DNA of 64,000 nt, from the IMG/VR virus record IMGVR_UViG_3300008110_010000, positions 155,356 through 219,355 of that record; one strand, 5' to 3'. Positions 16,089 through 62,523 of the stretch are shown piece after piece. A program made the translations under genes and the position numbers. How positions within the stretch are numbered: position 1 is the stretch's first letter; each line of letters opens with the position of its first letter. The notes beneath the pieces were generated by a model. It was not told where the DNA came from. It was given only the letters and a program-made list of their open reading frames with translations, and searched no databases.

Positions 16089-16343
16089 ATGTTTAATACT
16101 GAAAGAAAAAGTTATTATGACTACATAAATTCAACAAGAGATAATAGATCAAATGTTGGATTCAACTACGAGGGGCAGATATTTGAAAAAACCCTGTCCT
16201 CTATAACACTTGAAGGCGACAAAAACAGGAAAAGTATAATGTCGTATATCGAGAGGGTAGTTTATAGATTAATCGAGGCAACTAAGGGAATTAGAAATTT
16301 TGTTAACTACAGAGTTCCTAAAAATAATAAGTACGTTAGGTAA
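16089..16343 (+). CDS. Hypothetical protein (84 aa)
   Basis: Fills the operon gap; its stop overlaps the next start (TAATG). Confidence 0.6.
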   Translation: MFNTERKSYYDYINSTRDNRSNVGFNYEGQIFEKTLSSITLEGDKNRKSIMSYIERVVYRLIEATKGIRNFVNYRVPKNNKYVR

Positions 16344-30800: not shown

Positions 30801-31355
30801 AGACATTCACTAGGATTTGAAGCTTCTTCTACCGATACATTGTTTGTTAATACAGTAACAAACCAGACCAAAAATTATCAGCAGCTTTCTTATAACCAGA
30901 TTGCTACAAACTCTTATGGAGCTACTGGTGCAAATACCTCATATCCAGAAAAGCTAGGATTTAGTTCAGATGATGAATATTTGGTCGGAAAATATTCTTG
31001 CGGATCATATCTATTTATGTCTCCTTCAAGTCACTCTACGATCCAAGTTGAGGGTTCAACAACTCTAGCAACAAAAACGCTTTCTTCTGGTGAAGAAAAT
31101 TCTATAGTTATACCCGTCTTATTCCAAATGAGATGTCAGGATAAACTTGGCTATATAGGAGGATTTAGAAATAGCGGAGCGATAAGAAATATTACCTACA
31201 CTAAAAAGATAGGGATAGATATAAAAGTAAATAATGAAGAGTTATTTTCTTTTGACTTGTCAGTCTCAGGAAGCTATACTAAATCAGCATTAGCTTCTCC
31301 AACATATTCAAGTTTTAGAGACAGACTAGGAATAAGAAGACTCATCGAGGCATAA
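27822..31355 (+). CDS. Unknown virion structural protein (1177 aa) with a central coiled coil
   Basis: Long ORF 1 nt after the previous stop; coiled coil KVKLQNEIDAINKSIDQTRSEL. Confidence 0.6.
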   Translation: MAGTKNSISSLLAQFLRLQKNSLEIINKLSNATTSKEDIVSVEFIDENNNASTISIPSWGYIINEIKRLDSNIKRLSGLEDGDANVRNADGTVSRIYEAKPLLDPIAPANLQVPSNFKFRSNHFFESFLNPLLFVSFNLDGQVDSETKRVFVKRIIANTFTDAQKNWFDTNLKGRNDISDSDLMSALTGEGITYTIDESPEDLPLRVIRYKGNFAVLRVFDTIVPVTIGGQVVNQTVRKYKLDTITYKDLISSGLNSDRQIKVGDQLMTKGGSKLEVTSIDLSELTVVLKRISGYDPVPIGEGALTLSSDILSPLQVNVNIGHDERQGVFIKAINDNHHVTGSTYSNGVIFYSNEMIIGTSNGNMTLDEFYKTQVADFGSQFLSNTKEKVIPSVYGLVPNVPVLNSSNFKVVQINKQITQSTTSEKFAAAVQNKVKLQNEIDAINKSIDQTRSELADLTITSVTKSTASSRESLIAKIDSLTREKSTKTSLLQTVIQDLNNLSSAAPEVTEAPKYRVRGFWPIPSPIEDGKSGSQSVIQFRVRYRYLTKQGNATNAEEIKFSDNDGTERRATYSNWIEYKTDIRKKSYDSVTKKYFWKDEDVQDADLPNINQIDIPVTSGEKVEIKVSSISEAGWPMNPLESDFSGSVIIDFPEELSVGNTNEQYVTQNSNDQVLVSLQQDLTSRGLDSHLSTAFNSGDKYFAHVADTISSGFFDSTGRSLDLYQKILAMDKEIASLKALISVAKGVLTVYIKSGSDLIKVNRGSVVELFAGYYDELIDLTNFSNYGKIVSVLYSIELRNETASPLELASIIPGGQNVMSLDNTSTTATPDYATNRKYDLSPISLTSIKPLDVRPNLTGRNSYIHASPFQSANANSQFIYPRFKSVGFDDDLYFTPKTGLTWNSESGVSGVPVDGGSLIPFKPGGTSTPGTANANIWNGSYASGSPVGNGKLNEFCVHISHPTIVNEATTTSKSFENLIRPIQGTSGFNYPSFRHSLGFEASSTDTLFVNTVTNQTKNYQQLSYNQIATNSYGATGANTSYPEKLGFSSDDEYLVGKYSCGSYLFMSPSSHSTIQVEGSTTLATKTLSSGEENSIVIPVLFQMRCQDKLGYIGGFRNSGAIRNITYTKKIGIDIKVNNEELFSFDLSVSGSYTKSALASPTYSSFRDRLGIRRLIEA

Positions 31356-40100: not shown

Positions 40101-40322
40101 TTAACTGCGTTCGGTGGAAGTTCTTTTGCTGGTGAGGCTGATACTTTCCTACAGATTACTGGTATTACTGTTCCTGATCCTTCACCAAATATTATTAGTG
40201 CTTATTCTATTGGTGCAAATCCAGTTTCCCAAACAATTTGGTTGGATCCTGGAAATTACGTTGCTTCTCTATATGGTTCCTTCACTATTAGTAGTGGATC
40301 TGGAACAGTAAGTTGTGTTTAA
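37188..40322 (+). CDS. Tail fibre protein (collagen segment, tail-collar domain, Pro-Thr linker, C-terminal domain)
   Basis: [13 protein letters not shown] collagen; PAGTIMPW...[40 protein letters not shown] collar; [12 protein letters not shown]. Confidence 0.85.
39891..40001 (+). repeat. (Pro-Thr)15 + PAPTPAP linker
   Basis: CCN-ACN dicodon repeat with varied third positions. Confidence 0.95.
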
Positions 40323-45070: not shown

Positions 45071-46051
45071 ATGGAAAATTTTGACATTTTTAGTTTGGAC
45101 AATGAGGACTTTCTGAAACCAGAACCCCAAGCTCAAGGCGGCGACGCTAACATTTACAAACCCTATCCAGAACTTGGAAAGGATGGAGTTTATAAATCTT
45201 TGATTAGATTCCTCCCAAACATCGCAAATCCCAAAAAATCTAAAATCCACAAATATTATGTGTGGTTGAAAGATCCAGTAGACAACAGTAACTTTGTTGC
45301 TGACTGTCCATCAACTGTAGGTAAAAAATCAATACTAAAAGACATCTTCTGGAAGTTAAAAAACTCTCCATCTGCTAAGGATCAAGAGCTTGCTAAGTCT
45401 TTCTCGCGTAAGGAGGATTACTATGCATTGATTCAAGTAGTTAAGGATCCAAGCAAACCTGAATTGGAAGGCAAAATTATGGTTTTCAAATTCGGTAAAA
45501 AGGTTGCTGATATGATCGAGCAACAAATTAAGCCAGAATATGGTACTCCATGCAACCCTTTCGATCTGTTTGAAGGTAAGAATTTTGGTGTGCATGTTAG
45601 AAAAGTAGGGGATTGGAACAATTACGATCTTTGCCAATTTGTTGGTGAGAAAGGGCCAATTTCCATCGGAGGATCTCCTGTTGAAAAAAGCGAAGCTGAT
45701 CAAAAAAGAATCGTTGAATACTTAAAAGCAGGTCCACAGGATCTAGTTGAAAAATACGATTACAAAGAATGGAGCGACGAAGACAGGGAAAAAATTAACT
45801 CAATTATTCGCAACACCATTCCAGACGGAAGAATGTTATCTGAAATCTTCTCAGGATCTCCGGATTCCAAACCATCTGCATCAAGTGCCAATCCAAACCC
45901 GATGAAAAAGGAGGTCAAAAAGTCTGCTGAAGCAGATTTCTTCTCCGATACAGAAAGTCTAGAAGAAGCTGAAGCAATGCAACCAGCATCACCTGCTAAG
46001 AAGACTTCTGCATCTTCTGGAAGCTTGGATGATTTGTATAACGATCTCTAA
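45071..46051 (+). CDS. Single-stranded DNA-binding protein, T4 gp32-like
   Basis: IRFLP, YYALIQVVKDP..PELEGKIMVFKFGKKV, NPFDLFEGKNF, NYD motifs and an acidic C-terminal tail. Confidence 0.9.
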   Translation: MENFDIFSLDNEDFLKPEPQAQGGDANIYKPYPELGKDGVYKSLIRFLPNIANPKKSKIHKYYVWLKDPVDNSNFVADCPSTVGKKSILKDIFWKLKNSPSAKDQELAKSFSRKEDYYALIQVVKDPSKPELEGKIMVFKFGKKVADMIEQQIKPEYGTPCNPFDLFEGKNFGVHVRKVGDWNNYDLCQFVGEKGPISIGGSPVEKSEADQKRIVEYLKAGPQDLVEKYDYKEWSDEDREKINSIIRNTIPDGRMLSEIFSGSPDSKPSASSANPNPMKKEVKKSAEADFFSDTESLEEAEAMQPASPAKKTSASSGSLDDLYNDL

Positions 46052-47122: not shown

Positions 47123-47322
47123 CAAAAGAGGAATTAGAAAGGTATAATAGGAAGAAATTCTTATTGAAAGTTCCTGTTTCTTATATGGCTAGTGAGGATT
47201 TAGAACTCCCTCAACTGGAGTTTAACTTTACCCCAGAGGAAGTAAAGTTAAACAAGAAGATAGTTACTGAGGTAGTTGATATAAAAAAAGAAAAAAAGAA
47301 TAAAAGCAATAAGCTTCTATGA
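47101..47322 (+). CDS. Hypothetical protein (73 aa)
   Basis: Fills the operon gap and overlaps both neighbours. Confidence 0.45.
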   Translation: MGHDFDLTKEELERYNRKKFLLKVPVSYMASEDLELPQLEFNFTPEEVKLNKKIVTEVVDIKKEKKNKSNKLL

Positions 47323-47762
47323 GTGATACTATAAGCAATTTCGAAGCACAATTCCAGGAAGAAAGAGAAACATGGACAGAAAGAATTCGTGAACTTTCTG
47401 TCAGAATGAGAAACATCAGAGAAATCGGAGAGGTTCAGGTTGAGCTTTATTCGGATAGACAAAAGTTATTGGAATACTCTTTTAAGTTAGGACAAGCTCT
47501 AAGTAGAATAAATTCTAATTATCGTTCTGAAAAGAAAAATAAAATGATGTATTACTCAGAGGAACACAACATTAGATATGGCTCTAATGAAAAAACCCAC
47601 CTCATCGATGGAGATCTGAGTGAAATTAAACACAGGATAGATCTGATTGATAATCACACTAGCTTTATGAATGAGACAATCAAAACTGTTGACCATATGT
47701 TATATGGGATAAAGGCAAGGATATCTCTAGAGGAGTTTATGCGAGGCGGTGGGGTTAAATAA
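47319..47762 (+). CDS. uvsY: Recombination mediator UvsY-like
   Basis: Helical 147 aa protein immediately before UvsW; C-terminus IKTVDHMLYGIKARI...F..GG. Confidence 0.7.
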   Translation: MSDTISNFEAQFQEERETWTERIRELSVRMRNIREIGEVQVELYSDRQKLLEYSFKLGQALSRINSNYRSEKKNKMMYYSEEHNIRYGSNEKTHLIDGDLSEIKHRIDLIDNHTSFMNETIKTVDHMLYGIKARISLEEFMRGGGVK

Positions 47763-47773
47763 GAAAATTTTAG

Positions 47774-49300
47774 ATGCTTAAATTTATAGTTTCAGAAGAT
47801 TTACAATGGTTACTTTTACAAGACTATGACGAGGAAGTTGAAAGAAAACAACTAGAGATTTCGTTGACTCGTAAAATACACAATCATTTTTTCCATCCTT
47901 TAGTGAAAAAGAAACATTGGGATGGAGCTATTTGTTTTGTGGATAAAAGAGGGCCACTCTGGAAAGTTCCTATTGGTCTATGGAGTGAGGTTTTTGATAT
48001 TGGCGAGAAGTATAAAATAGATGTTGATATCGTAGGTCTAGATCAAATCATAGAAAATGATCTTACATTAGAAGAATTTACCCAGTGGGCCAAAGAATTT
48101 TTTGCTGATAAAGAACTGAAGCCCAGAGATTACCAAATAGAGGCTGCGTGGAGAATTATAAAATTCAGATATTCCTGCCTAGAAATTGCGACTTCTTCGG
48201 GTAAGACCCTGATTGCATTTATCGTTCTGGCTTATCTTAAGATGGTTAAGCAAGTAAATAAATTCTTAATGATTGTTCCAAACACCACGCTGATTCTTCA
48301 AGGATCTGAGGATTTTGAAAGCTATGGATTAAAAGAACTTGATAATTGCGAAATGCAACTAATCCACGGGGGTAATAAAAACAAGATATCATCCGGGCTT
48401 ATGATAGGCACATATCAGTCATTGGTTAAGCAGGATGAATCTTTCTTTGACGGGGTTGAAGCTGTGTTTGTCGACGAATCACATCAAAGTCATTCTAAGT
48501 CGATTAAAGAAGTAGTTTCTAAATGTAAAGAATCTAAATATAGATTTGGTCTTTCGGGAACATTGACCAATAGAAACACTGCAGAGCATCTAACAATTCA
48601 GCAATATCTTGGACCATTGGTAATGGAGATCAGTCCTAAATTTTTGTTTGATAATAACTATGCTACTCCTGTTTCCATTAAGGTAGTTAAGATGAATTGG
48701 CTTTCCGACGATCTAAAGGAAAAGCTTTATGATCTAAGAACTAACAAGCAAGATTTAGAAGGCAGTGAAATCTTTAATGTGGAAAGAAAGTTAGTTATTT
48801 CATCGGATAAAAGAATCAATTATATAGTGGACTTCATTTCTAAAACTAGCAAAAATTCCCTGGTTTTATTCCAATCCGTTGGAGAGGGATATGGAAAAAG
48901 AATGTATGACATGCTTAGAGAAATTCAGGCAGATAAAGAGATCTTTTATGTCGACGGAGACACTGAACCTGAAAGAAGAGATTTTTATAAGGGTAAAATG
49001 GAAGAGGGTACTAATAAGGTTCTAGTGGCCAGTTTTGGAACCCTTAGTACCGGAGTCTCTGTGAAAAATATTCACAACATTTTCTTGACAGAATCTTACA
49101 AATCTGAGGTATTGATCAAACAAAGTCTTGGAAGGGGAATGAGACTTTACGAGGGAAAGGAGAAGGTTAATGTTATTGACTTTGTCGACGACTTTACCTG
49201 GAAAGCTTCTGCAAACTACCTAATAAAGCATTCTAATGAGCGTATAGAGATCTACAAGAGGGAAAAGTTCGAATATAAGGTTTATGAGGTTACTCTCTAA
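47774..49300 (+). CDS. uvsW: UvsW-like SF2 DNA helicase
   Basis: PRDYQ, ATSSGKT, VDESH, GLSGT, ASFGTLSTGVS and QSLGRGMR motifs. Confidence 0.92.
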   Translation: MLKFIVSEDLQWLLLQDYDEEVERKQLEISLTRKIHNHFFHPLVKKKHWDGAICFVDKRGPLWKVPIGLWSEVFDIGEKYKIDVDIVGLDQIIENDLTLEEFTQWAKEFFADKELKPRDYQIEAAWRIIKFRYSCLEIATSSGKTLIAFIVLAYLKMVKQVNKFLMIVPNTTLILQGSEDFESYGLKELDNCEMQLIHGGNKNKISSGLMIGTYQSLVKQDESFFDGVEAVFVDESHQSHSKSIKEVVSKCKESKYRFGLSGTLTNRNTAEHLTIQQYLGPLVMEISPKFLFDNNYATPVSIKVVKMNWLSDDLKEKLYDLRTNKQDLEGSEIFNVERKLVISSDKRINYIVDFISKTSKNSLVLFQSVGEGYGKRMYDMLREIQADKEIFYVDGDTEPERRDFYKGKMEEGTNKVLVASFGTLSTGVSVKNIHNIFLTESYKSEVLIKQSLGRGMRLYEGKEKVNVIDFVDDFTWKASANYLIKHSNERIEIYKREKFEYKVYEVTL

Positions 49301-49329: not shown

Positions 49330-49941
49330 ATGAAATATATCCGTTCATATGCTTTATATGAGAGTAGTTTGAAGATATTTGAAAAGTACGATTCTTCAAA
49401 ATACACTAAATATACTGGCCAGTCCGCCGAGCCTGGATGGCAGGATTGGATTTACAATTTTTTCAAAAGCATGCAAAGCAGATTTGAGGGGTTTGATCGT
49501 TTTTACCAAAGAGAGATAGCAGTAAAGAAAACTGGAGGTGGTGTAATAGACACCGGCATGGGATGGCTAATTGGAAAAACTGGATCTCTTGCTACTGAGC
49601 TAATGGCTAAAATATTTGAGCCAAATAAATTTGCTACTCTGACCGGTCAGGGTTTGCTTGCTCCAAAATCTCCTGCTGATGTGTCTGGAATTAAATCCGC
49701 TAAAGACGTTACTCCTGAGCATCATAGATTGCTGAACGATCAGTTTGTTAAAAACGATCTTCCCACAATTTCTAATGATGACCAAATGAAAGATTATATC
49801 TTTAATTACTATAAGAAAATAGGGGTTCCTCCTAATTATAATAAAGTTGCTGATGAAGTAGCTGCAACGTATGCAACCACATACTTTAACAATAAAAAAT
49901 CGCAAGGTATGCTCGCCCAGGGTTTACCTTCTACATTTTAA
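49330..49941 (+). CDS. Hypothetical protein with capsid-targeting-like leader (MKYIRSYALYE)
   Basis: ORF with late promoter; leader pattern shared with its neighbours. Confidence 0.6.
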   Translation: MKYIRSYALYESSLKIFEKYDSSKYTKYTGQSAEPGWQDWIYNFFKSMQSRFEGFDRFYQREIAVKKTGGGVIDTGMGWLIGKTGSLATELMAKIFEPNKFATLTGQGLLAPKSPADVSGIKSAKDVTPEHHRLLNDQFVKNDLPTISNDDQMKDYIFNYYKKIGVPPNYNKVADEVAATYATTYFNNKKSQGMLAQGLPSTF

Positions 49942-49955
49942 TAGAAACAAAAAAA

Positions 49956-50222
49956 ATGAAAAAAATAACACAGATTCAAGAAAGCCTTAAGATAGAAAAA
50001 GCCAAGGTTATTTCCAAATTAGAGGAAACAAACAAATACCTAACTTTTGCAAAAGGCTATTACAAAAAGCATGGAGTATCTGGTCCTTTTGACGAGAAGT
50101 TTAAAAGTGACAAGAAAGCTCAAAAGAAATTTATGGATGACCTAGGTAAAGCTTGGGATGAGCACAAAGAAAAACATGGAATTGTAACCAGCTCAGAAAA
50201 GCCCTGGGGTAAGAAAAAATAA
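49956..50222 (+). CDS. Small basic hypothetical protein (leader MKKITQIQE)
   Basis: 88 aa, Lys-rich, in operon. Confidence 0.55.
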   Translation: MKKITQIQESLKIEKAKVISKLEETNKYLTFAKGYYKKHGVSGPFDEKFKSDKKAQKKFMDDLGKAWDEHKEKHGIVTSSEKPWGKKK

Positions 50223-50226
50223 CCTA

Positions 50227-50655
50227 ATGATCGTAGATATTCTTTACCCCATAATCGAGCATTACATTGGAGATGGAGTAGCGGGGGTTAAAAGAGGACA
50301 TGATGAAGTTTCCTTTTTAACTATAATGGGTAAGGATGGTAGAATTGAAAAGAATGAAGAAGGCGATTGGGATTTGTTAGTAGAGGAGGAAAAAGTTGCC
50401 GAGATAGAGGATTCTTTATTTTCTATTTTCTGTGAGGCAAAGAAACAACCCCCAATAGATGTCTATTATAAAAAACTATTAAAAGTAAAAAGAAAAAAAC
50501 TAAATTATAGATCTAGCATTTTGGTAGAACAACTCGTTAAATCTTTGGAAATGCTAATGCTTAACATGGAAGTTAAATTGAAGAATCCAATAGCAATAGG
50601 ACCATTTTTAGTTTTTACTTCTATGGGAAGAAAAGACATTATCGTATTAAATTAA
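50227..50655 (+). CDS. Hypothetical protein (142 aa)
   Basis: In operon with 3-4 nt gaps. Confidence 0.55.
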   Translation: MIVDILYPIIEHYIGDGVAGVKRGHDEVSFLTIMGKDGRIEKNEEGDWDLLVEEEKVAEIEDSLFSIFCEAKKQPPIDVYYKKLLKVKRKKLNYRSSILVEQLVKSLEMLMLNMEVKLKNPIAIGPFLVFTSMGRKDIIVLN

Positions 50656-50658
50656 TAT

Positions 50659-52662
50659 ATGGCAGGGATTAAACAACTAAGTGAAGTTTATAAAAAGCAA
50701 GGAGCAGAATTCATTGACAATTTATTTGGAGATGAAGTTACAGTTTCTGAAAAATTGAATGGTATGTCTTTCTCCTTCGAGAAAAGCATAGGAGACGGAA
50801 CTATGTTCTTTTATAAAAGAGATCAGGTTAATCCCATTTCTAAAATTGATAGAGTTCTGATGAACTATTATGATGGACCTATTACATACGTGCAGGGGTT
50901 ACCAGATCTTACGAAAAATGAAATTCCTCCTGGTTGGAGATTTGGAACTGAATTTTTTATTAACGAAAGTCCAGTTTTATTGTCATACAACAGAGTCCCT
51001 AAGAATGGACTTGTTCTAACCCATATCATTGTTAAAAATCAATATGGGGATATCGAGAGAACTATTGTTGAAAAGGAGGAATTAGATTATTGGGCAGATC
51101 TATTAGATATTGAAAGATCCCCAATTATTTTTCAGGGAAAATTATCAGACCAACAAAAAGCCTCAATTAATGATTTTGTTAATTCTCCGTTTGATAGCTT
51201 AAAATCGTCTCATGGAACACAGAGCTTTGCTAAGTACTTAGTGAAAACTTTAAATCCGGATTTAGATAAAACATTACTTAATGATGATTTAGATCGTCCC
51301 ATAGAGGGTATAGTTTTCAGATTTGGACCAATCAGCGGAACTGGTGAATCTTTTTCTGCAAAAATTATTGATCCAGTTTTTGAAGACATCACAAGACAAA
51401 ACAATGTTAAAAAAGCCAGTTATTTCCCAAGCGACATCTACGGAATAACACTCCTGGAAGTAATGAATTATATCCTAGATAAAGGTATAGAGAGTTTTGA
51501 ATTTGCCGGGGAAGATCCACAGGACAGATACATTTCTTTTATCTCTGGTGTTTTCAATTCCTTCATAGAAGATAATGGTGAAAAATACTTGGGTCTCGAT
51601 TTTCAAGAGCCCGAATTTTTAAAACAAGACGGATTTGAATCTAATTTAGATCTGATTAGTAACGATCAGACTAAACAATTAGTTGCTCAAGATGAAAGCT
51701 ATGAATCTCTTTTTAAATTGATCTTATCAGCATTTAGAAAGATTAAGAAAAAATCTGGTGGTTTTTTTACTCCTGGAGTTATAGAGCAATTTAATTTATT
51801 AGTTAGAGAGATATCAGATTATCTCAATAGAAAACCTGTAATTGCGGAATCATTGATTCCAACATTTAGTGAGTTTAGAAAGGTTAAAAAATCTTTTGTA
51901 CCCGATGAAGAACAGGATGATGAAGACGAGGAAGAACCTATGGAAGAACCCGAGGATGAAATTATAGGGGAGCCTATAGAAACCCCTCAAGAAAATCCTG
52001 AAGATGTTGAAGAAGAACCTGAAGAGGTTCAAGAAGAACCACAGAAAGATCCAGAAGAAATCCAGGTTAAAGAAATAGATCCTGAAATTGCCTTTAAAAT
52101 GCAAGCTGCTTTAGGACAGATGGATCCTATTTCAGATCCTGCTGTCAATCCTGAATCACAGAATGTAAATGTAATTATTGGTAAGTTTCAACCATTTAAT
52201 AACGGTCATCTTAAAATGATCAAAAAAGCAAATCAGGTAAATGGAAATCCTGTTGCCTTGATGGTGGTTAATAATTCCAAGAGCTTCATTAATAGGGAAA
52301 TAATGAATAAGATGATGAAGATCATTTCTGATGAAATGTCTGATCTAATTCATTCGGTAAATTACGTTCCTGATGATCTACTTTCTACTTCTATTGAAAA
52401 AATTAAAGATAAATGTAACCCTAAGAGCTTAACAGTGGGATCTAAAAAGCTAGACAATTATTTGATCCAGAGCCGCACTCTTAAGAAAAGAAAAAAATTA
52501 CCCCAGGATTTCCAAATCCAAACTTCTCCGGAGTGGGTTATTTCCAGAGAGGTAATGAAGACTCTAGAAGATAAAGATTACATGCAATTCAAAAAGCATG
52601 TCCCTAAATCTCTTTCTTCTCTTTGGGAGGAATTACATCGCTGCTACGAATCAGCTAAATAG
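50659..52662 (+). CDS. Fusion of an RNA-ligase-type (Rnl2-like) nucleotidyltransferase, an acidic linker and a cytidylyltransferase-like Rossmann domain
   Basis: EKLNG (motif I), FGTEF (III), IEGIVFR (IV), AKIIDPVF (V); C-terminal IGKFQPFNNGH (HxGH variant). Confidence 0.7.
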   Translation: MAGIKQLSEVYKKQGAEFIDNLFGDEVTVSEKLNGMSFSFEKSIGDGTMFFYKRDQVNPISKIDRVLMNYYDGPITYVQGLPDLTKNEIPPGWRFGTEFFINESPVLLSYNRVPKNGLVLTHIIVKNQYGDIERTIVEKEELDYWADLLDIERSPIIFQGKLSDQQKASINDFVNSPFDSLKSSHGTQSFAKYLVKTLNPDLDKTLLNDDLDRPIEGIVFRFGPISGTGESFSAKIIDPVFEDITRQNNVKKASYFPSDIYGITLLEVMNYILDKGIESFEFAGEDPQDRYISFISGVFNSFIEDNGEKYLGLDFQEPEFLKQDGFESNLDLISNDQTKQLVAQDESYESLFKLILSAFRKIKKKSGGFFTPGVIEQFNLLVREISDYLNRKPVIAESLIPTFSEFRKVKKSFVPDEEQDDEDEEEPMEEPEDEIIGEPIETPQENPEDVEEEPEEVQEEPQKDPEEIQVKEIDPEIAFKMQAALGQMDPISDPAVNPESQNVNVIIGKFQPFNNGHLKMIKKANQVNGNPVALMVVNNSKSFINREIMNKMMKIISDEMSDLIHSVNYVPDDLLSTSIEKIKDKCNPKSLTVGSKKLDNYLIQSRTLKKRKKLPQDFQIQTSPEWVISREVMKTLEDKDYMQFKKHVPKSLSSLWEELHRCYESAK

Positions 52663-52724: not shown

Positions 52725-53570
52725 ATGGGAAAGCTCTCAAATTTTGAAAACAGTCAAAAATCTCCTCTTTTAGAAAACTCTGATAAAAGCAAAGCTGCTT
52801 TTGATAAAATAGTGGATTGTAAAATTAGACTTATTGCAGGATCTAATACTTTCTTTGGAAAGTTTTCTTTAAGCCTTGAATTTATTGAGGATCTTAATCT
52901 TCAATACAAAACTATGGCCACCGATGGTATGAAAATATACTATGACCCAGATTTTGTATTAAAACACAGCGAGGAAGAAATTAGATGGGTAATCTGTCAT
53001 GAAATCATGCATTGTGCTCTTTTTCATTTCATTAGAAGGCAAGCAAATCCCACAGCGTGGAACGCAGCTGCCGATTATGCCCTAAATCAATTAATAGACC
53101 CGGAATCTTACACAATTCCCCCAGGGGATCCACAGAGCCCTGAAGTAAGAAAAGCTAAAATATTTTTAGGTGCTTTGGGAAAAATGATACCAGGATGCTT
53201 AAATACTAGACCAGCTACCCCGGACAATCCTTACGGAAAACCAGAGTATAAGGGTTGGTCTGCAGAGCAAATTTATGACCATATAATAGAAAACAACGTT
53301 CAGCTTCCTCCAGAAGAAGGATGGAATTACGGAGGCGTTACACCCCCAGAATTTACTGGTTCTTCTAAGAAAAAATCTGCAGGGGCAACAGGTCCTTCTG
53401 GTCCTATCGCTAAAATTGGCGATTTCGTAAAAATAAAAAGCGGAGGGTTTGGTCGAATAACATCAATAGATGCAAATACTGGGGAAGCAATGGTTGACCC
53501 ATACTCTGAGGCTGATGCTATAGCACAGATAGAAAAACAATCCGGAAGAAAGGTTATATCAATAAAATAA
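52725..53570 (+). CDS. Zinc metallopeptidase domain protein (DUF2201 N-terminal-like) with a C-terminal KOW/SH3-like motif
   Basis: TMATDGMKIYYDPDFV, VICHEIMHCALFH and WNAAADYALN match this family; KIGDFVKIKSGGFGRITSID is KOW-like. Confidence 0.8.
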   Translation: MGKLSNFENSQKSPLLENSDKSKAAFDKIVDCKIRLIAGSNTFFGKFSLSLEFIEDLNLQYKTMATDGMKIYYDPDFVLKHSEEEIRWVICHEIMHCALFHFIRRQANPTAWNAAADYALNQLIDPESYTIPPGDPQSPEVRKAKIFLGALGKMIPGCLNTRPATPDNPYGKPEYKGWSAEQIYDHIIENNVQLPPEEGWNYGGVTPPEFTGSSKKKSAGATGPSGPIAKIGDFVKIKSGGFGRITSIDANTGEAMVDPYSEADAIAQIEKQSGRKVISIK

Positions 53571-53576
53571 ACTTCG

Positions 53577-54497
53577 ATGAAAATAGATATTAATGAATTA
53601 AGGAAGGTATCAGTAAAATTTGAACCGGAACCACCCCCACCACCACCTCCCCCTGGGACCCCACCGTCTCCTCCTCCCCCTAAGATTGAGGATTTTCCTG
53701 TTCCCCCTTCCCCTGATAAACCCTGGGACGACGAGGACGGAGGAGACGCCGGAGGAGCAGGAAACCAAGCTGGTGAAAAACCTAGGGTAATTGACGTTGA
53801 TCCGGAAAACATAGATGAATTAAAGGAAAAATGGAGAAGGGAGGTCGAAAAGGCAAGAAGATCTGGTGGACTTCCCCCAGAATTACAAAAATCTCTGGAC
53901 AAATTCAACGCAGGTAAAGTTGATTGGAAGGGTGATTTGAAGAGATTTGTTACCGGCCTTTCCGCTAAAAGAGAATATTTTTTACCTAACAAAAGGTTCC
54001 TAAGTAGAGGACAGGTTTTATGGGGTACCAAAAGAGTTAAAGAAGGTTTTGATGTTCTAACCCTGATCGTGGATACTTCAGGATCCATCTCCCAAAAAGA
54101 ATTGGAGGTATTTATTAACGAGGCTTATGCAATCGTAGAGGAATTTAATCCAAGAAAAACTTACGTTCTTTTCTTTGATACTAAGGTATATGAACCGGTG
54201 ACTGAAGTAGAAAGAGGTGAAAACATTAAGGTTAATAAAGCATACGGAGGAGGAGGAACTAGCTTTCTTGAACCTTTCCAATGGATAGAGAAGAATCTAT
54301 TAGGTCAGGTAAATATGGGCCCAGTTGTATTCTTTACTGACGGTTATCCAACATCAGGAGGATGGCCATCATCGAATGATTATGGAATCAGCACCTATGA
54401 TAAAAAAGTGATGTGGATTATAATACATCAGGATTACCCAAACAACGATCCTAATGTTGTAGTTCCGTTTGGAAATAGAACCGATCTAGTTTACTAA
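53577..54497 (+). CDS. vWA domain protein (DUF2201 C-terminal-like) with a Pro-rich N-terminal linker
   Basis: MIDAS motif IVDTSGSIS, GGGGTSF, VFFTDGY; VDWKGDLKRF; poly-Pro stretch. Confidence 0.85.
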   Translation: MKIDINELRKVSVKFEPEPPPPPPPPGTPPSPPPPKIEDFPVPPSPDKPWDDEDGGDAGGAGNQAGEKPRVIDVDPENIDELKEKWRREVEKARRSGGLPPELQKSLDKFNAGKVDWKGDLKRFVTGLSAKREYFLPNKRFLSRGQVLWGTKRVKEGFDVLTLIVDTSGSISQKELEVFINEAYAIVEEFNPRKTYVLFFDTKVYEPVTEVERGENIKVNKAYGGGGTSFLEPFQWIEKNLLGQVNMGPVVFFTDGYPTSGGWPSSNDYGISTYDKKVMWIIIHQDYPNNDPNVVVPFGNRTDLVY

Positions 54498-54532: not shown

Positions 54533-56161
54533 ATGCCAAGCATTAAAAAATTTGACCAATATGTAAACGAGGATTATTCATTAAAAAGTATGATATCTGG
54601 TGTTGGAAGCTGGATTAAAAATCTCGTAAGCAAGATTAAAGGTGGAGGAATAGAGAAAGTTCCCAACACGCCCGAAGCACACGTGAAAGCTGGAAAGCCC
54701 ATGGTAAATTATTATAGCTGTGCACGTGGCGGCGGTAAATCTGTGGAGCAACAAGTTGAAGACACTTATGGTATTAAGTTTGAATCTAAAGCATTCGAAG
54801 ACTATGAGATTGATGAGGCAACTATGAAGGATTACGGAGATATTGAAATGTTAAAATATCCTGATAAAGAAGCTGGAATTTCAAACATGAAAGGAGATGC
54901 TCTGAAGAGCATGATACTTAAAAGATTTGATAGTTTAGTTAGAGGCGGCTACGATAAGCCAATCTTTATTTATGGAGCTCCTGGTATAGGTAAAACCGAG
55001 ATAGTTGCTAGCGTAGCTTCCCAACTTTGTATAGATCTTATAACGGTTGATCTTCAGTTCATGGATCCTACTGACTTCTTGGGTATTCCATCAACTGATG
55101 ATATCCCGAAAGAATTTTTCACTGAAAAAGATATAGAAAAAAGAATTGGAATTCTAAGTAAGCTCGGAAAGGGAATAACTAGATCTAACCCTCCATCTTG
55201 GCTTCCATTAGACAATGGCGAACCAATCACAGTGGTTGGTGGAGACGGCAATGAGGAAAAATCCGACGGACCTGGTGGAATTATTTTCTTTGACGAAATG
55301 AACAGGGCAAACCCTCCAGTTATTGCTGCAATGATGGTACTTCTTCAACAGAGAAGAGTTGGTACCGAGTATAATCTTCCTAGTAAATGGTTGATTGTAG
55401 CAGCGGGAAATAGAAAGGAAGACGATTTACCTGGTGAGATCAATGATTTAGGTTCAGCTCTTATTAACCGTTGTGAGGTAGTAAACTACCTTGCTAGTCC
55501 TAAAGAATGGATCGAATGGGTTAAAACCTCTCCAATAAAATTGAAGGGTGCATTTGGAAGAACTGCCAATGAAATTGTACTTCCTGAATTGATAGCATTT
55601 ATGGAATTTTCTAAAGATTATTTCTACACTTTAAATGCAGGAAAAAAAGGAAGAGTATTTGCATCCCCAAGATCTTGGATCGATGCTTCTAAGGCTCTTT
55701 ACTCAGAAATGGATTACCTCAGAAGACAAGGAACCAATTCAATTTCTAAAGAAGAGATGATTGATATTTTTTCTAGAAACGTGGGTCCAGAACCTGCACA
55801 GGCATTCGTTGAATTTTATACAGAATCACAGAATACCAAAATGGAAGATGTTGTTAAGGTTTTTGACGATCCTGATAACGCTCCTCTTCCAGAAAAAATT
55901 GGTGGACAATACAAGCCAGATAAATCTTACTATTTAATAGCTGCTATAGTTGATAAATCTAGACAAATCAGTCCTGATGGGAAACTTACTGCAAGCCAAT
56001 TCTCTAATGCGATAGATTGGTCTATTAGATTAGATTCTGCTGAATATGGAACTGCTTTTGTAAGCTTATTACTTTCTAAGCACCCTTACATAACAAAATC
56101 TGGTATCGAATACATTAAACACATGGAAAGATACACTGACAGATACATGCCAGACAAATAA
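54533..56161 (+). CDS. MoxR/AAA_5-type AAA+ ATPase with a long N-terminal extension
   Basis: Walker A IYGAPGIGKT, Walker B IIFFDEMNRA, VAAGNR, ALINR and ASPRSW motifs. Confidence 0.9.
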   Translation: MPSIKKFDQYVNEDYSLKSMISGVGSWIKNLVSKIKGGGIEKVPNTPEAHVKAGKPMVNYYSCARGGGKSVEQQVEDTYGIKFESKAFEDYEIDEATMKDYGDIEMLKYPDKEAGISNMKGDALKSMILKRFDSLVRGGYDKPIFIYGAPGIGKTEIVASVASQLCIDLITVDLQFMDPTDFLGIPSTDDIPKEFFTEKDIEKRIGILSKLGKGITRSNPPSWLPLDNGEPITVVGGDGNEEKSDGPGGIIFFDEMNRANPPVIAAMMVLLQQRRVGTEYNLPSKWLIVAAGNRKEDDLPGEINDLGSALINRCEVVNYLASPKEWIEWVKTSPIKLKGAFGRTANEIVLPELIAFMEFSKDYFYTLNAGKKGRVFASPRSWIDASKALYSEMDYLRRQGTNSISKEEMIDIFSRNVGPEPAQAFVEFYTESQNTKMEDVVKVFDDPDNAPLPEKIGGQYKPDKSYYLIAAIVDKSRQISPDGKLTASQFSNAIDWSIRLDSAEYGTAFVSLLLSKHPYITKSGIEYIKHMERYTDRYMPDK

Positions 56162-56247: not shown

Positions 56248-56814
56248 ATGAAATTCATAAACAAATTTGGAGATCACTTTCCCAAGCCTGTAAATAATTT
56301 AAATAAAGTAAATGAAGATGCTGGTTATGGAAACGACTATTTTGCAGACGAAAAGGTTGAAAAATCTCAGCACTACTTCTTTAAAATTAGTGAGGGAGAC
56401 GAAGAGATTGGATTAATCTTAAAAATTGGAAAATTTTCTAAGTCTGGAGTTATCTCCGAGAATGAAAAAAATTACGGCGTGCTTCATTTAGAGATTATGA
56501 ATCCCGATGATATGGATGATTATTTAGTAAATGATAGTGAATACAGATCTAGGGAAGATGAAGGATTCTCCCTTTCAAACGAGGTATTAAGTCAGGCATT
56601 TTTTATTATTACCAAATCAATGGATAATTATTTACAAAAAAATCCGAAGGTTACTAAGTTTTATGATGAGATTCTAGAAAATCTTGGCATGGATAGAGAA
56701 GAATATTCAGATTTCATTTCCCCGAGAATCAGAACGTGGTCCAGGGGAAGATGGAAGATTCAGGAAGGAAATTCAGAGAAATCATTAATTTACACTAAGA
56801 CCTCACATGAGTAA
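56248..56814 (+). CDS. Acidic hypothetical protein (leader ending VNE-D)
   Basis: 188 aa with a late promoter. Confidence 0.6.
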   Translation: MKFINKFGDHFPKPVNNLNKVNEDAGYGNDYFADEKVEKSQHYFFKISEGDEEIGLILKIGKFSKSGVISENEKNYGVLHLEIMNPDDMDDYLVNDSEYRSREDEGFSLSNEVLSQAFFIITKSMDNYLQKNPKVTKFYDEILENLGMDREEYSDFISPRIRTWSRGRWKIQEGNSEKSLIYTKTSHE

Positions 56815-57124
56815 TCTTAAAAAATATAGCGAATTCATTAATGAATCATTAACACCGGTAATGTTTATGAGTGTTAAAAATGAATTGAAGAATTCGATTG
56901 TTAAATTCCTACACGAAAAAGGACAGGCAACTAGAAAGGAAATTTTAGAATTTGCCTCCACCCTAGGAGAGAATGGATCTGTTGTGGACAGAAGATGGAT
57001 CTCCAGAAATAAACAATTGATTAAGTGTTTGGTTTCAGAGGAAGGACCAAATCTTTATACCCTTACAAAATTGGGAAAAAGATTTGCCAAAAGTCTTTCG
57101 GTAAATGAAACAAAAAACCTTTAA
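56807..57124 (+). CDS. Small protein with capsid-targeting-like leader and a possible winged-helix fold
   Basis: Leader MSNLKKYSEFINE; IVKFLHEKGQATRKEIL...YTLTKLGKRF resembles a winged helix-turn-helix. Confidence 0.6.
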   Translation: MSNLKKYSEFINESLTPVMFMSVKNELKNSIVKFLHEKGQATRKEILEFASTLGENGSVVDRRWISRNKQLIKCLVSEEGPNLYTLTKLGKRFAKSLSVNETKNL

Positions 57125-61113: not shown

Positions 61114-62523
61114 ATGATAATTGACGTTGAGAATTTAGGGGAGAATCTAAGAGTATCCCATTACACTGAAGAAGGAGATTTAGCCTATCTCGATTTAAAA
61201 ATTCCTCAAGCGGAAAGATATGTCTGGCGCAAATGTTCTGCTGCCGATAGGAGTCGTGAAAAGGGTTGGGCTTCTTGGGACGGTTTTCCTGTTAAGAAAC
61301 AGTCCACTTTGAAATACGACAAATATCGGTTAGTTGAACTTTTAGAATATTTTGATAAAGAGAAAACCAAACCCCTTTGGGATACACAAACTCCTAAAAA
61401 ATACTTTGTTGATATTGAGGTGGAGATCACAGACAATCGTGCTGATTCCCTAGACACTGTTAGAGCAAATAATAAAGTGCTCACTATTGCGATTGCATCA
61501 TCTCAAGGTAAAATTCTAATTCTTGGACTAGATAAATTGGATTCACCAAAGATCTTAAAAATAGAGCAGAGAGTCAATGAACATTTTAAAACACTTCCTT
61601 ACGATTTAAAATGGACTTTCAACTATAGATCCTTTGAGAGTGAGTTTGACATGATTTATACCTTTATGTCCAAACTCATGCATAAGATGCCTTTAATCAC
61701 AGGATGGAACTGGTTTGGATATGACTGGCCTTATCTGCTTAATCGTGCTAAGAAATTGGGTATTGATCCTAAGATTGCTTCACCTAGTGGAATTTTATTA
61801 GGTAAGGACCAAATTCCGATGCATGTGTTAATGGTCGATTACTTACAGATTTATAAAAAATGGGATAGAGTAATTAAGATCAGGGAATCAGATTCTCTGG
61901 ATTATGTTTCTAATGCTGCTTTAGGTGTAAGAAAAATTCATTACCAAGGCACATTGAAAGATCTATATGAATCTGATTTTGAGACGTATATCTTCTATAA
62001 CGCAATTGACTCTTGTCTAGTACATTATATTGATCAGAAGCTAAACACATTAGCTACTTTCTTTAAAATAGCAAACGTAAGTGGTGTAGAGATTAATAGA
62101 GCTCTTTCTCCTGTTTGGACAACAGAAGTCCTTATGTCAAGAAAATTTCTGGCTAGAAACAGAGTGATAGTTTGGGAAAGAACTGAGGAGGAACACACAA
62201 AATTCGAAGGAGCTTATGTGAAGCAACCTATTAAAGGATTACATGAATGGGTAGTTTGTTTTGACTTTGCTTCTCTGTATCCTAATACTATGATGCAATG
62301 GGGTTTATCTCCTGAGATCTTTATTGGTAAGAATCTAGCAAATCCTCCAGAAGGAGCAATTAAGACTGCGGGAGGAGCTTATTTTCATTCCAAGAATGGG
62401 GAAGAACCAGTTTTAAGAGACGTATTAACCACACTATATGCAATGAGAAAATCAGCCAAGAAAAAATACTTGGAATGCGAAATTAAAATCACAGAATTAG
62501 AAGAAATATTAAAATCAAGATAA
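61114..62523 (+). CDS. Family B DNA polymerase, N-terminal subunit only (T4 gp43A-like: exonuclease, motif A, first fingers helix)
   Basis: ExoI FVDIE, ExoII GWNWFGYDWPYL, ExoIII YNAID and motif A CFDFASLYP are present. KxxxNSxYG and YxDTDS are absent. Confidence 0.9.
   Translation: MIIDVENLGENLRVSHYTEEGDLAYLDLKIPQAERYVWRKCSAADRSREKGWASWDGFPVKKQSTLKYDKYRLVELLEYFDKEKTKPLWDTQTPKKYFVDIEVEITDNRADSLDTVRANNKVLTIAIASSQGKILILGLDKLDSPKILKIEQRVNEHFKTLPYDLKWTFNYRSFESEFDMIYTFMSKLMHKMPLITGWNWFGYDWPYLLNRAKKLGIDPKIASPSGILLGKDQIPMHVLMVDYLQIYKKWDRVIKIRESDSLDYVSNAALGVRKIHYQGTLKDLYESDFETYIFYNAIDSCLVHYIDQKLNTLATFFKIANVSGVEINRALSPVWTTEVLMSRKFLARNRVIVWERTEEEHTKFEGAYVKQPIKGLHEWVVCFDFASLYPNTMMQWGLSPEIFIGKNLANPPEGAIKTAGGAYFHSKNGEEPVLRDVLTTLYAMRKSAKKKYLECEIKITELEEILKSR

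What the first reader, a model, noticed from the sequence alone, without database searches (positions are those of the whole stretch)
50659..52662. RNA-ligase-type domain fused to a degenerate HxGH nucleotidyltransferase through a possibly cleavable acidic linker
Seen: ligase motifs I (EKLNG), III, IV and V are intact. An internal VIAE-SLIPTFSEFRK (51838-51880) resembles the leader motif and is followed by an Asp/Glu-rich linker (about 51900-52080). The C-terminal GKFQPFNNGH has Asn in place of the first His. Known: phage RNA ligases repair tRNA cut by anticodon nucleases, and HxGH enzymes include NMN adenylyltransferases used by phages to rebuild NAD+. Inference: a two-module anti-defence or nucleotide-handling protein, possibly processed into two parts in the head. 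Similar fusions may already be annotated simply as cytidyltransferase.
Basis: partly seen in the sequence, partly recalled or inferred. Interest (0 to 1): 0.66.

Follow-up and report, generated by a model that had tools for sequence, protein, structure and literature searches.

The report
Phage RNA ligase fused to nucleotidyltransferase
An uncultured jumbo phage encodes an RNA-ligase-like enzyme joined by an acidic tether, which carries a T4-style capsid-targeting and cleavage signal, to a second nucleotide-transfer domain; hundreds of phage lineages keep this pairing, I found no paper describing it, and it may be enzyme cargo injected with the DNA.

Summary

The C-domain is not a true NMN adenylyltransferase. 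It scores far below the NadM and PPAT cut-offs, and no NadV gene is in the record. It has Asn for the first His and also Met for the arginine of the second signature motif.

The ligase module defines a large family restricted to uncultured phages (634 clusters at 50% identity). About two thirds of sampled clusters carry the fusion. One lineage has the two modules as adjacent genes. About 21% of clusters have lost the ligase lysine, through at least 14 separate changes.

The conserved segment between the modules follows the same pattern as N-terminal leaders in this genome, which closely resemble the T4 capsid-targeting sequence. The genome also encodes a T4-type prohead protease.

The gene lies in a conserved block: gp32, UvsY, helicase, this gene, polB. 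Verdict: a new domain architecture built from known folds. Interest is moderate to high.

The parts
50659..52662 (+). Whole ORF, 667 aa (P0001): ligase module, tail element, acidic linker, HIGH nucleotidyltransferase
50659..51402 (+). RNA-ligase-type adenylyltransferase domain, residues 1-248
50749..50763 (+). Ligase motif I, EKLNG; K32 is the predicted AMP-accepting lysine
   Evidence: hhalign register places E31-K32 opposite E34-K35 of T4 Rnl2. K is present in 86 of 111 close homologues and 114 of 145 cluster representatives.
50815..50820 (+). Motif Ia-like K53-R54 within FYKRDQ
   Evidence: Aligned with K54-R55 of T4 Rnl2; conservation
50944..50955 (+). Motif III, GTEF (E98)
   Evidence: Aligned with GEF (E99) of T4 Rnl2; E in 98 of 116 homologues
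51301..51321 (+). Motif IV, IEGIVFR (E216, R221)
   Evidence: Pattern match to EGYVLK of T4 Rnl2; predicted strand 217-222; E or D in all 116
51355..51375 (+). Motif V with a single lysine, SAKIIDP (K235 and D238 invariant)
   Evidence: predicted strand 232-237
51406..51834 (+). All-helical C-terminal domain of the ligase module, residues 250-392
   Evidence: Secondary structure. The Rnl2 full-length alignment reaches model residue 327. The domain was not folded or searched alone.
51838..51882 (+). Conserved tail element: V-I-A-E397 then S398-L-I-P-T-F403-S-E-F406-R-K. It combines a possible prohead-protease site with a capsid-targeting-like aromatic pair.
   Evidence: E397, F403 and F406 are invariant; S398 and P401 are at least 90% conserved. 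pLDDT is below 50. It is the extreme C-terminus of ligase-only homologues. It has the same pattern as the genome's N-terminal leaders and the T4 IPII/IPIII leader.
51895..52143 (+). Acidic, proline-rich linker, residues 413-495
   Evidence: Composition. Family linker length is 12-167 residues (median 62), with median Asp/Glu fraction 0.30. The linker was not included in either structure model, so its disorder was not tested.
52144..52659 (+). HIGH-superfamily (HxGH) Rossmann nucleotidyltransferase domain, residues 496-667
   Evidence: AF2 model pLDDT 94.7. Foldseek matches NadD 8aih at 6.5e-8, many PPAT chains, and NMNAT 1f9a. Profile search of the PDB gives NMNAT 1f9a at 1.4e-5 and NadM 2qjt.
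52180..52209 (+). First signature motif, GKFQPFNNGH: Asn514 replaces the first His; His517 is kept
52540..52560 (+). Second signature motif region, ISREVMK: Met633 stands where PPAT and relatives have the Arg of ISxTxxR
   Evidence: Family alignment, profile alignment to H. pylori PPAT, state counts

Best explanation
The gene encodes a two-module nucleotidyl-transfer protein that is a syntenic core gene of a lineage of uncultured T4-like jumbo and huge phages. Module 1 (residues 1-392) is an Rnl2-type ATP-dependent polynucleotide ligase: an adenylyltransferase domain with K32 (in EKLNG), R54, E98, E216 and K235, followed by a helical domain. I infer the classic three-step path. K32 takes AMP from ATP, AMP passes to a 5'-phosphate end, and the 3'-OH attacks to seal a break in RNA or in a duplex with RNA on the 3'-OH side. 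Module 2 (residues 496-667) is a HIGH-superfamily nucleotidyltransferase of a separate, phage-specific branch. It is nearest to NadM-type NMNAT and PPAT but is a member of neither. In this phage it lacks the first His and the motif-2 Arg, so it is probably weakened or repurposed, perhaps only binding a nucleotide. Its substrate is unknown. The two modules work as a unit: they are fused in most lineages and are adjacent genes in one. They are joined by a conserved tail element and an acidic tether. Shown: the folds, motifs, family size, synteny and residue states. Inferred: ligase activity, RNA as the substrate, and weakened C-domain catalysis. I read the inter-domain element most simply as a capsid-targeting and processing signal, at about 35-40% probability; it is listed separately as the first rival or extension.
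For: Folds. All top matches for the N-domain are RNA ligases, ranking above DNA ligases. Motif register against T4 Rnl2. Ligase-only relative P0183 passes the Pfam RNA_ligase cut-off (33.2 against 27). The phage has a separate ATP-dependent DNA ligase, so this is not the replicative ligase. C-domain: profile hits to NMNAT, NadM and PPAT, but only the generic TIGR00125 model is approached, at 24.3-26.9 against 27.7; relatives with intact motifs pass it. Functional coupling: 96 of 151 cluster representatives are fusions. In L016 and L017, from two samples, a 392-aa ligase gene overlaps by 4 nt a gene that starts with the NT domain (E 1e-24). Core-gene status: the order gp32, UvsY-sized ORF, SF2 helicase, small ORFs, this gene, polB is kept in relatives at 40% and 50% identity.
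Against: No biochemistry exists for any member. Motif V has one lysine instead of two. The window protein is below the Pfam cut-off for RNA_ligase, and the profile found no PDB sequence match. About 21% of clusters lack the motif I lysine, through at least 14 changes on the tree. One clade lacks both the lysine and the second His. So catalysis cannot be the only conserved function of the family. No RNA-healing partner was identified among the neighbours.
Confidence: 0.55

Rival explanations
1. Packaged, protease-processed cargo. This extends the best explanation and is the reader's idea. The inter-domain element acts as an internal or C-terminal capsid-targeting sequence. The chain enters the prohead, and the T4-type prohead protease cuts after E397 and probably within the Glu-rich linker. 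The separated ligase and NT modules are then ejected with the DNA, so RNA repair is available at the start of infection.
For: T4 IPII and IPIII begin MKTYQEFIAE. In T4, leader residues 4 and 7 (the aromatic pair) direct targeting, residues 8 and 10 (I and E) direct processing, and the packaged enzyme Alt is also cut at its C-terminus (PMC9026906). This genome has leaders such as MKKYSEFISES, MSNLKKYSEFINES and MPSIKKFDQYVNED. The strict pattern occurs in 8 of 229 N-termini against 0.36% of internal 24-residue windows. The protease and major head protein were identified, and a leader-bearing ORF lies 1.2 kb downstream of the head protein gene. The major head protein has ...SLNE then SAG at residues 40-46, just before its PHROG match starts. 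In the ligase family, E397, F403 and F406 are invariant and the segment is disordered. 53 of 95 motif-bearing representatives (about 60 after hand correction of parser misses) have (I/L/V)xE 1-7 residues upstream, with 15 different P2 residues and mostly S, G or A at P1'. Other clades carry a second leader-type motif just before the NT domain, for example FYSYNEFISALE-T and NFKEFTNISKVNINE-AL. Motif density is 3.3 times higher between the domains than within the folds. Neighbouring genes in this and related phages also carry leaders.
Against: All known T4 targeting sequences are N-terminal; this one is internal. The gene sits between a helicase and polB, not in the head module. No TATAAATA late-promoter motif lies upstream of its operon, though two leader genes have one 19-21 nt upstream. 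A single (I/L)xE site is unremarkable on its own, since the protein has seven. One clade (KTFEDYL) lacks the upstream site. No proteomic data exist.
Confidence: 0.35
2. Replisome- or recombination-associated nick sealer. The protein stays intact. The tail element is a docking peptide for a replication or recombination partner such as gp32, the helicase or a clamp, and the acidic tether acts as a flexible or DNA-mimicking spacer.
For: The position between the gp32/UvsY/helicase genes and polB is conserved. The motif is the extreme C-terminus of ligase-only homologues, as with the partner-binding tails of replication proteins (the analogy is from general knowledge). In T4, rnlB lies 3 kb from uvsW.
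Against: No clamp gene was recognised; the only PF09116 hit (E 0.006) falls inside polB. The phage has its own DNA ligase. The motif pattern matches the N-terminal leaders of unrelated proteins, which a replisome peptide would not explain.
Confidence: 0.2
3. Largely non-catalytic protein. The conserved job is structural, chaperone-like or nucleotide sensing, as with the tail-fibre attachment role of T4 RNA ligase 1. Enzyme chemistry is dispensable and is decaying.
For: The motif I lysine has been lost repeatedly: 31 of 145 clusters, at least 14 changes. Only 18 of 116 close homologues keep K, both His and the Arg. The P0072-P0078 clade lacks both K and the second His yet keeps synteny, and its relatives lie on contigs up to 474 kb. 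The N-domain still shows 68% mean column identity.
Against: The window protein itself keeps K32, R54, E98, E216 and K235. 79% of clusters keep the lysine, and E31 and K235 are almost invariant, which indicates selection on the active site in most lineages.
Confidence: 0.12
4. NAD+ salvage. The C-domain is an NMN adenylyltransferase that rebuilds NAD+ after host NADase defence.
For: The best sequence matches are archaeal and NadM-type NMNATs, with GKFQPFNNGH aligned to GRFQPFHKGH. JGI names several homologues NMNAT.
Against: The scores are 18-21 bits against NMNAT model cut-offs of 127-181. Relatives with intact motifs reach only 36-38 bits, and the match is confined to the first ~50 residues. 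No NAPRTase/NadV was found, whereas every NadM phage surveyed carries NadV (PMC9503650). There is no Nudix or kinase partner domain. Asn514 and Met633 replace hallmark residues. The commonest first-position residue in the wider family is Thr, as in PPAT.
Confidence: 0.07

Closest known systems
T4 RNA ligase 2 (RnlB, gp24.1) and the Rnl2/REL1 group
   Different: About 15% identity. No sequence-level PDB match. One motif V lysine instead of two. A longer helical domain (about 140 residues). Carries the tail element, acidic linker and a second enzyme domain. Below the Pfam cut-off.
Naegleria/Deinococcus nick-sealing RNA ligase (Rnl5) and T4 Rnl1
NadM / archaeal NMN adenylyltransferase (1f9a, 2qjt)
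   Same: Rossmann fold. The G-(K/R)-F-Q-P-F-x-x-G-H signature is nearly identical. The helical C-terminal part contains ...VPK....
   Different: Fails the NMNAT model cut-offs by about 100 bits or more (18-21 bits against 127-181). No Nudix domain and no NadV in the genome. First His is Asn and the motif-2 Arg is Met.
Phosphopantetheine adenylyltransferase (CoaD)
   Same: The fold matches over the whole domain (Foldseek E about 1e-7; profile alignment covers positions 6-148). PPAT also lacks the first His (T-N-G-H), so position 514 need not be His for activity. Thr is the commonest residue there in the wider family.
   Different: TIGR01510 score is 22-24 bits against a cut-off of 103. PPAT keeps the ISSxxVR arginine, which is Met here.
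T4 capsid-targeting sequence of IPII/IPIII, and gp21-processed packaged enzymes such as Alt
   Same: An aromatic pair three residues apart around an acidic residue, plus an (I/L/V)xE site. An S77 protease is present. Alt shows that an enzyme can be packaged and cut at its C-terminal side.
   Different: The element is internal, or C-terminal in ligase-only forms, rather than N-terminal. The putative cut precedes the aromatic pair instead of following it. Packaging is untested.
Polyvalent proteins of phages and conjugative elements (PMC5512222)
   Same: Several enzyme domains in one chain, in a phage (paper abstract).
   Different: Only two catalytic domains, and none of the hallmark polyvalent-protein domains was seen. 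The comparison is conceptual only.

Membership tests
ATP-dependent RNA ligase, Rnl2-like (covalent nucleotidyltransferase superfamily; Pfam PF09414) | Adenylyltransferase fold | tested here: met
ATP-dependent RNA ligase, Rnl2-like (covalent nucleotidyltransferase superfamily; Pfam PF09414) | Motif I lysine nucleophile in K-x-(D/N)-G | tested here: met
   K32 in EKLNG is aligned with K35 of T4 Rnl2. It is absent in 31 of 145 family clusters.
ATP-dependent RNA ligase, Rnl2-like (covalent nucleotidyltransferase superfamily; Pfam PF09414) | Motifs Ia, III and IV with Arg, Glu and Glu | tested here: met
   R54 and E98 are placed by hhalign, though the alignment is weak (E 0.07). E216 is placed by pattern and predicted strand.
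ATP-dependent RNA ligase, Rnl2-like (covalent nucleotidyltransferase superfamily; Pfam PF09414) | Motif V with two lysines (K-x-K) | tested here: not met
   Only K235 is present, in SAKIID; T4 Rnl2 has K225-C-K227.
ATP-dependent RNA ligase, Rnl2-like (covalent nucleotidyltransferase superfamily; Pfam PF09414) | Pfam gathering score | tested here: not met
   20.4 bits against 27 for the window protein. Ligase-only relative P0183 scores 33.2, so the link to the family is transitive.
ATP-dependent RNA ligase, Rnl2-like (covalent nucleotidyltransferase superfamily; Pfam PF09414) | Self-adenylylation and sealing of 3'-OH/5'-PO4 RNA nicks | not testable with these tools
   Needs purified protein.
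HIGH (HxGH) nucleotidyltransferase superfamily (PF01467 / TIGR00125) | Rossmann-like fold of the cytidylyl/adenylyltransferases | tested here: met
   Model pLDDT 94.7. Foldseek matches NadD, PPAT and NMNAT at E 1e-7 to 1e-5, TM 0.6-0.73.
HIGH (HxGH) nucleotidyltransferase superfamily (PF01467 / TIGR00125) | H-x-G-H signature | tested here: inconclusive
   The motif is N514-N-G-H517: the Gly and second His are kept and the first His is lost. PPAT works with T-x-G-H.
HIGH (HxGH) nucleotidyltransferase superfamily (PF01467 / TIGR00125) | Second motif I-S-x-T-x-x-R (arginine) | tested here: not met
   Met633 is at the position of the PPAT arginine. Arg is present in 53 of 116 homologues.
HIGH (HxGH) nucleotidyltransferase superfamily (PF01467 / TIGR00125) | Curated score cut-off | tested here: inconclusive
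   PF01467 scores 20.9 against 21 by hmmscan and 23.3 in the six-frame genome search. TIGR00125 scores 24.3-26.9 against 27.7.
NMN adenylyltransferase (NadM / archaeal type) | Equivalog or subfamily model score | tested here: not met
   NF002243 scores 18.5-21.3 against 127; TIGR01527 scores 16-19 against 181. Relatives with intact motifs score 36-38.
NMN adenylyltransferase (NadM / archaeal type) | Co-occurrence with NadV (nicotinamide phosphoribosyltransferase) in phages | tested here: not met
   No PF04095 match in the 219-kb record, which is 79% complete. The rule is from PMC9503650.
Phosphopantetheine adenylyltransferase | Equivalog model score | tested here: not met
   TIGR01510 scores 21.9-24.4 against 103.3.
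T4-type capsid-targeted, gp21-processed head proteins | (I/L)-x-E cleavage site and aromatic pair at i, i+3 | tested here: met
   I395-A-E397 followed by F403-S-E-F406. These positions are conserved across the family. The T4 rule is from PMC9026906.
T4-type capsid-targeted, gp21-processed head proteins | Leader at the N-terminus of the precursor | tested here: not met
   The element is at residues 394-408 of 667. The N-terminus (MAGIKQLSEV...) was included in the ligase-domain model (residues 1-412), at lower confidence: mean pLDDT 64 for residues 1-10.
T4-type capsid-targeted, gp21-processed head proteins | Cognate S77 prohead protease in the genome | tested here: met
   PF03420 at 35.2 bits, and phrog_207 at E 2.9e-37, at C1:128801-130042.
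T4-type capsid-targeted, gp21-processed head proteins | Presence in virions and observed cleavage | not testable with these tools
   The phage is uncultured and no proteome exists.

The most novel reading that the evidence does not exclude
The HIGH-family domain uses a polynucleotide 5'-phosphate as its acceptor, giving pN + ATP -> AppN + PPi. This is the same chemistry that all HIGH transferases perform on small phosphate acceptors. It would hand pre-adenylylated ends to the fused ligase fold, which then only needs to carry out step 3. That would explain why the two modules stay together and why the ligase lysine can be lost repeatedly. From recalled work on T4 Rnl2, lysine-less Rnl2 still seals pre-adenylylated ends.
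Probability: 0.07. Interest if true: 0.85.

Novelty: new variant of a known kind. Interest (0 to 1): 0.62.

Why it matters
Both folds are textbook, but I found no description of their fusion in the literature I could search. Databases name the protein only by its weaker C-domain. The ligase module defines at least 634 sequence clusters, and the fusion is a fixed, syntenic gene of a widespread lineage of uncultured jumbo and huge phages.

Three questions become directly testable:
- Can a T4-type capsid-targeting signal work from an internal or C-terminal position, loading repair enzymes into the capsid for delivery with the DNA? That would make RNA repair an immediate-early, injected counter-defence.
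- What does a HIGH-family transferase do next to an RNA ligase? A nucleic-acid acceptor would be new enzymology.
- Why is the ligase nucleophile lost again and again while the protein is kept?

The family could also supply new RNA ligases for laboratory use.

Tried and rejected
- **PDB sequence search, ligase profile (A1):** no match even at E 10. The assignment rests on fold search and a weak hhalign to T4 Rnl2 (E 0.07). A local pairwise alignment of the motif IV/V region gave nothing usable.
- **Complex prediction, ligase module against NT module:** score 0.00, no verdict. This is not evidence either way.
- **Complementary loss test:** if the NT domain supplied adenylylated ends, lysine-less proteins should keep the NT second His. 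They do in 21 of 22 cases, against 55 of 66 for lysine-bearing proteins, but Fisher p = 0.28. The P0072-P0078 clade lacks both residues. Not supported.
- **Early argument against cleavage, dropped:** ligase-only homologues end just after the motif, which I first took as evidence against a cleavage site. A removable C-terminal targeting peptide fits the same observation, and T4 Alt is cut at its C-terminus.
- **Sliding clamp search (PF09116):** only a spurious weak hit inside polB, so clamp docking could not be tested.
- **C-terminal extensions of long relatives (300-650 aa):** no Pfam family.
- **TATAAATA scan:** not enriched genome-wide and absent upstream of this operon. Inconclusive for expression timing.
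- **Literature:** Burroughs and Aravind 2016 (RNA repair systems) is not held in the library. Two Aravind-lab surveys and a keyword search mention no such fusion.
- **Genetic code:** only table 11 was used.
Full report
**Observation.** The window holds one long open frame at 50659-52662 (+), 667 aa, kept as P0001.
- EKLNG is residues 31-35.
- VIAE-SLIPTFSEFRK is residues 394-408 (nt 51838-51882).
- The Asp/Glu-rich stretch is residues 413-495, with 42% Asp/Glu and 14% Pro.
- GKFQPFNNGH is residues 508-517.

Pfam sees both domains, each just under its cut-off: RNA_ligase covers 25-235 at 20.4 bits against 27, and CTP_transf_like covers 506-555 at 20.9 against 21. PHROGs, NCBIfam and the PDB see only the first ~50 residues of the C-domain.

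**Folds.** I built alignments of 44 diverse homologues for each module (A1 and A2) and folded them.
- The N-module model (pLDDT 83.6) has a mixed alpha/beta domain to about residue 248, a helical domain to about 392, and a low-confidence (pLDDT below 50), probably disordered tail at 394-412.
- Foldseek ranks T4 RNA ligase 2 first (E 1.5e-8), then the fungal Trl1 ligase domain, REL1, archaeal Rnl3, Rnl1 and NgrRnl.
- The C-module model (pLDDT 94.7) is a five-stranded Rossmann-type domain. It matches NadD, many PPAT chains and archaeal NMNAT at E 1e-7 to 1e-5.

**Ligase active site.**
- A profile-to-sequence alignment with T4 Rnl2, taken from the T4 record, is weak (E 0.07) but in a sensible register. 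E31-K32 falls on E34-K35, K53-R54 on K54-R55, and G-T-E98 on G-E99.
- Motif IV (EGIVFR, E216) and motif V (SAK235IID) are recognisable by pattern and by predicted strands.
- Motif V has one lysine where Rnl2 has K225 and K227.
- That these Rnl2 residues are essential is recalled from the Shuman laboratory's mutational work, not tested here.

**C-domain.**
- Profile A2 finds NMNAT 1f9a (1.4e-5), NadM 2qjt, and PPATs over nearly the full length.
- The PPAT alignment shows that the family's consensus Arg lies on the ISSxxVR arginine. P0001 has Met633 there.
- PPAT itself has T-N-G-H, so Asn514 alone need not abolish activity.
- The domain does not belong to any characterised enzyme family. NMNAT models score 16-21 bits against cut-offs of 127-181, and PPAT scores 22-24 against 103. 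Relatives with intact H-N-G-H and S-x-T-x-V-R reach only 36-38 bits, and only the generic TIGR00125 domain model is passed.
- The record has no NAPRTase/NadV and no other PF01467 gene. A survey of viral NAD systems found that every NadM phage also has NadV (PMC9503650).
- The NAD+-salvage reading is therefore unlikely.

**Family.**
- The word-indexed search found more than 400 full-length homologues at 39-89% identity on contigs up to 474 kb. They are named hypothetical, cytidyltransferase-like, NMNAT or PPAT.
- The exhaustive profile search with the ligase module found 634 clusters at 50% identity (E at most 1e-3), 243 of them below 1e-30.
- Of the 151 representatives examined, 96 carry the NT domain. 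Of those, 24 also have an unassigned tail of more than 150 residues, up to about 665. Thirty-five are ligase-only proteins of about 400 aa.
- In INPHARED only six uncultured huge phages (462-735 kb) match. BFVD's best matches are an uncultured Caudovirales 'cytidyltransferase-like' protein and an uncultured marine phage protein.
- One ligase-only member (P0245) is followed, with a 4-nt overlap, by a gene whose first 180 residues are the NT domain (E 1e-24). This is seen in two samples. It shows a natural fission at the linker and ties the two modules functionally.
- Another ligase-only member (P0183) passes the Pfam RNA_ligase cut-off and is followed by a second ligase-like paralogue.

**Catalytic residues vary by lineage.**
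- Among 116 close homologues, the motif I position is K in 86, N in 18 and M in 7.
- The first His position is N in 89, H in 23 and S in 4. The second His is H in 110.
- The motif-2 position is R in 53, with L, N, M or S in the rest.
- Only 18 of the 116 keep all four residues. The window protein is K, N, H, M.
- Across cluster representatives, 31 of 145 lack the lysine, requiring at least 14 changes on a FastTree. Thr is the commonest first-position residue, as in PPAT.
- Active-site loss is therefore recurrent. Even so, E31, K235 and D238 and the overall sequence stay conserved.

**Inter-domain element.** E397, F403 and F406 are invariant, and S398 and P401 nearly so, in a segment the model leaves disordered. 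Ligase-only homologues end 3-13 residues after it.

- Several ORFs of this genome begin with sequences such as MKKYSEFISES, MSNLKKYSEFINES (window 56807), MPSIKKFDQYVNED (window 54533) and MRKIQSFSQFVSEA.
- The strict pattern, an aromatic pair three residues apart around an acidic residue followed by (I/L/V)xE, occurs in 8 of 229 N-termini against 0.36% of internal 24-residue windows.
- T4 IPII and IPIII begin MKTYQEFIAE (read from the T4 record).
- In T4, leader residues 4 and 7 direct capsid targeting and residues 8 and 10 direct processing by gp21. The packaged enzyme Alt is also trimmed at its C-terminus (PMC9026906).
- This genome has the S77 prohead protease and a major head protein. The head protein reads ...SLNE then SAG just before its PHROG match begins, and a leader-bearing ORF lies 1.2 kb downstream of it.
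- In the ligase family, my parser found (I/L/V)xE 1-7 residues upstream in 53 of 95 motif-bearing representatives; checking the misses by hand raises this to about 60. P2 is highly variable and P1' is mostly S, G or A.
- Other clades carry a second leader-type motif directly before the NT domain. Examples are FYSYNEFISALE-T in the clade with intact motifs, and KTFEDYLKLKQMNE-E followed by NFKEFTNISKVNINE-AL in another.
- Motif density between the modules is 0.0127 per residue, against 0.0039 within the ligase folds.

This is real comparative support for processing, but it is not proof. The element is internal rather than N-terminal. No T4-type late-promoter motif precedes the operon. There are no proteomic data.

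**Genome context.**
- The window is C1:155356-219355 of a 219,355-bp IMG/VR virus record that is 79% complete.
- Upstream of the gene lie a gp32-like protein (45071-46051), a UvsY-like protein (47319-47762), an SF2 helicase (47774-49300) and three small ORFs.
- Downstream lie a DUF2201 metallopeptidase/VWA pair, an AAA_5 ATPase and, further on, polB (61114-62523).
- The same order holds in relatives at 40% and 50% identity.
- The phage has a separate ATP-dependent DNA ligase and no NAD-dependent one.

**Mechanism and rivals.**
- I commit to an Rnl2-type ligase module that is probably active in this phage (K32-AMP, then App-end, then sealing), coupled to a divergent HIGH-family module with unknown acceptor that is probably weakened here (confidence 0.55).
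- The most attractive extension is capsid targeting and cleavage at the inter-domain element (0.35).
- Other readings are an intact replisome-tethered nick sealer (0.2), a mainly non-catalytic role (0.12) and NAD+ salvage (0.07).
- The most novel reading not excluded is that the HIGH domain adenylylates polynucleotide 5'-phosphates for the ligase fold (0.07). The predicted complementary-loss pattern goes in the right direction but is not significant (p = 0.28).

**Limits.**
- The two-module complex prediction gave no verdict.
- A key RNA-repair survey is not in the library.

Noticed in passing
window 54533-56161, 56807-57124; genome C1:58107, 62492, 68645, 69618, 133762, 140447, 141411: At least 8-12 ORFs start with a T4 capsid-targeting-like leader: an aromatic pair around an acidic residue, then (I/V)-x-E. 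Among them are the AAA_5 (MoxR-like) ATPase next to the ligase gene and a 105-aa ORF. The AAA_5 leader is kept in a relative (L008: MSKVYNFKNYVKEE...). Neighbours of the fusion gene in L007 and L013 also carry leaders.
   Followed up: partly
window 52725-53570 and 53577-54497: The DUF2201 metallopeptidase/VWA gene is a single 455-460 aa ORF in relatives (L008-L010). Here it is two ORFs of 281 and 306 aa, split inside the DUF2201_N domain. Extra material lies at the junction, including an SH3-like piece and a Pro-run (PPPPPPPP). A 253-aa ORF lies on the opposite strand at 53327-54088.
   Followed up: no
P0124, P0125, P0128, P0145, P0151, P0152 and others: About a quarter of fusion clusters carry a further C-terminal extension after the NT domain (the ten scanned were 365-677 aa). 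Some ligase-only forms carry other long tails. None has a Pfam match.
   Followed up: partly
L014:6001-7892: Tandem paralogues: a 387-aa ligase-only gene that passes the Pfam RNA_ligase cut-off is followed directly by a second ligase-like ORF, which is cut off by the contig end.
   Followed up: partly
L016:6001-8855, L017:1078-3932: Natural split form: a ligase gene and an NT-domain gene overlap by 4 nt, in two samples. The NT copy has D-Y-F-H-P-V-N-K-S-H in place of the G-x-F-x-P-x-x-x-G-H signature.
   Followed up: partly
genome C1:140428, 141390, 169324 (window 13969), 212485 (window 57130) and others: TATAAATA, the T4 late-promoter consensus, lies 10-56 nt upstream of a same-strand start in 9 of its 25 occurrences, two of them before leader-bearing genes. 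The motif is not enriched genome-wide.
   Followed up: partly
genome C1:130806-132545 (L018:4807-6546): The major head protein has ...SLNE then SAGAY at residues 40-48, just before its PHROG match starts at residue 49. This is a likely propeptide cleavage site with the same x-N-E-S signature as the leaders.
   Followed up: partly
window 16343-23872, 31362-37160, 6270-10574, 27822-31355: Very large ORFs (2509, 1932, 1434 and 1177 aa) have only unknown-function PHROG matches or none. The ORF at 37188-40322 is a tail-fibre or collar protein.
   Followed up: no
window 49330-50655: Three small ORFs (203, 88 and 142 aa) lie between the helicase and the ligase gene. They match no family but keep their position and size in L008. 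The last one ends 3 nt before the ligase start codon.
   Followed up: no
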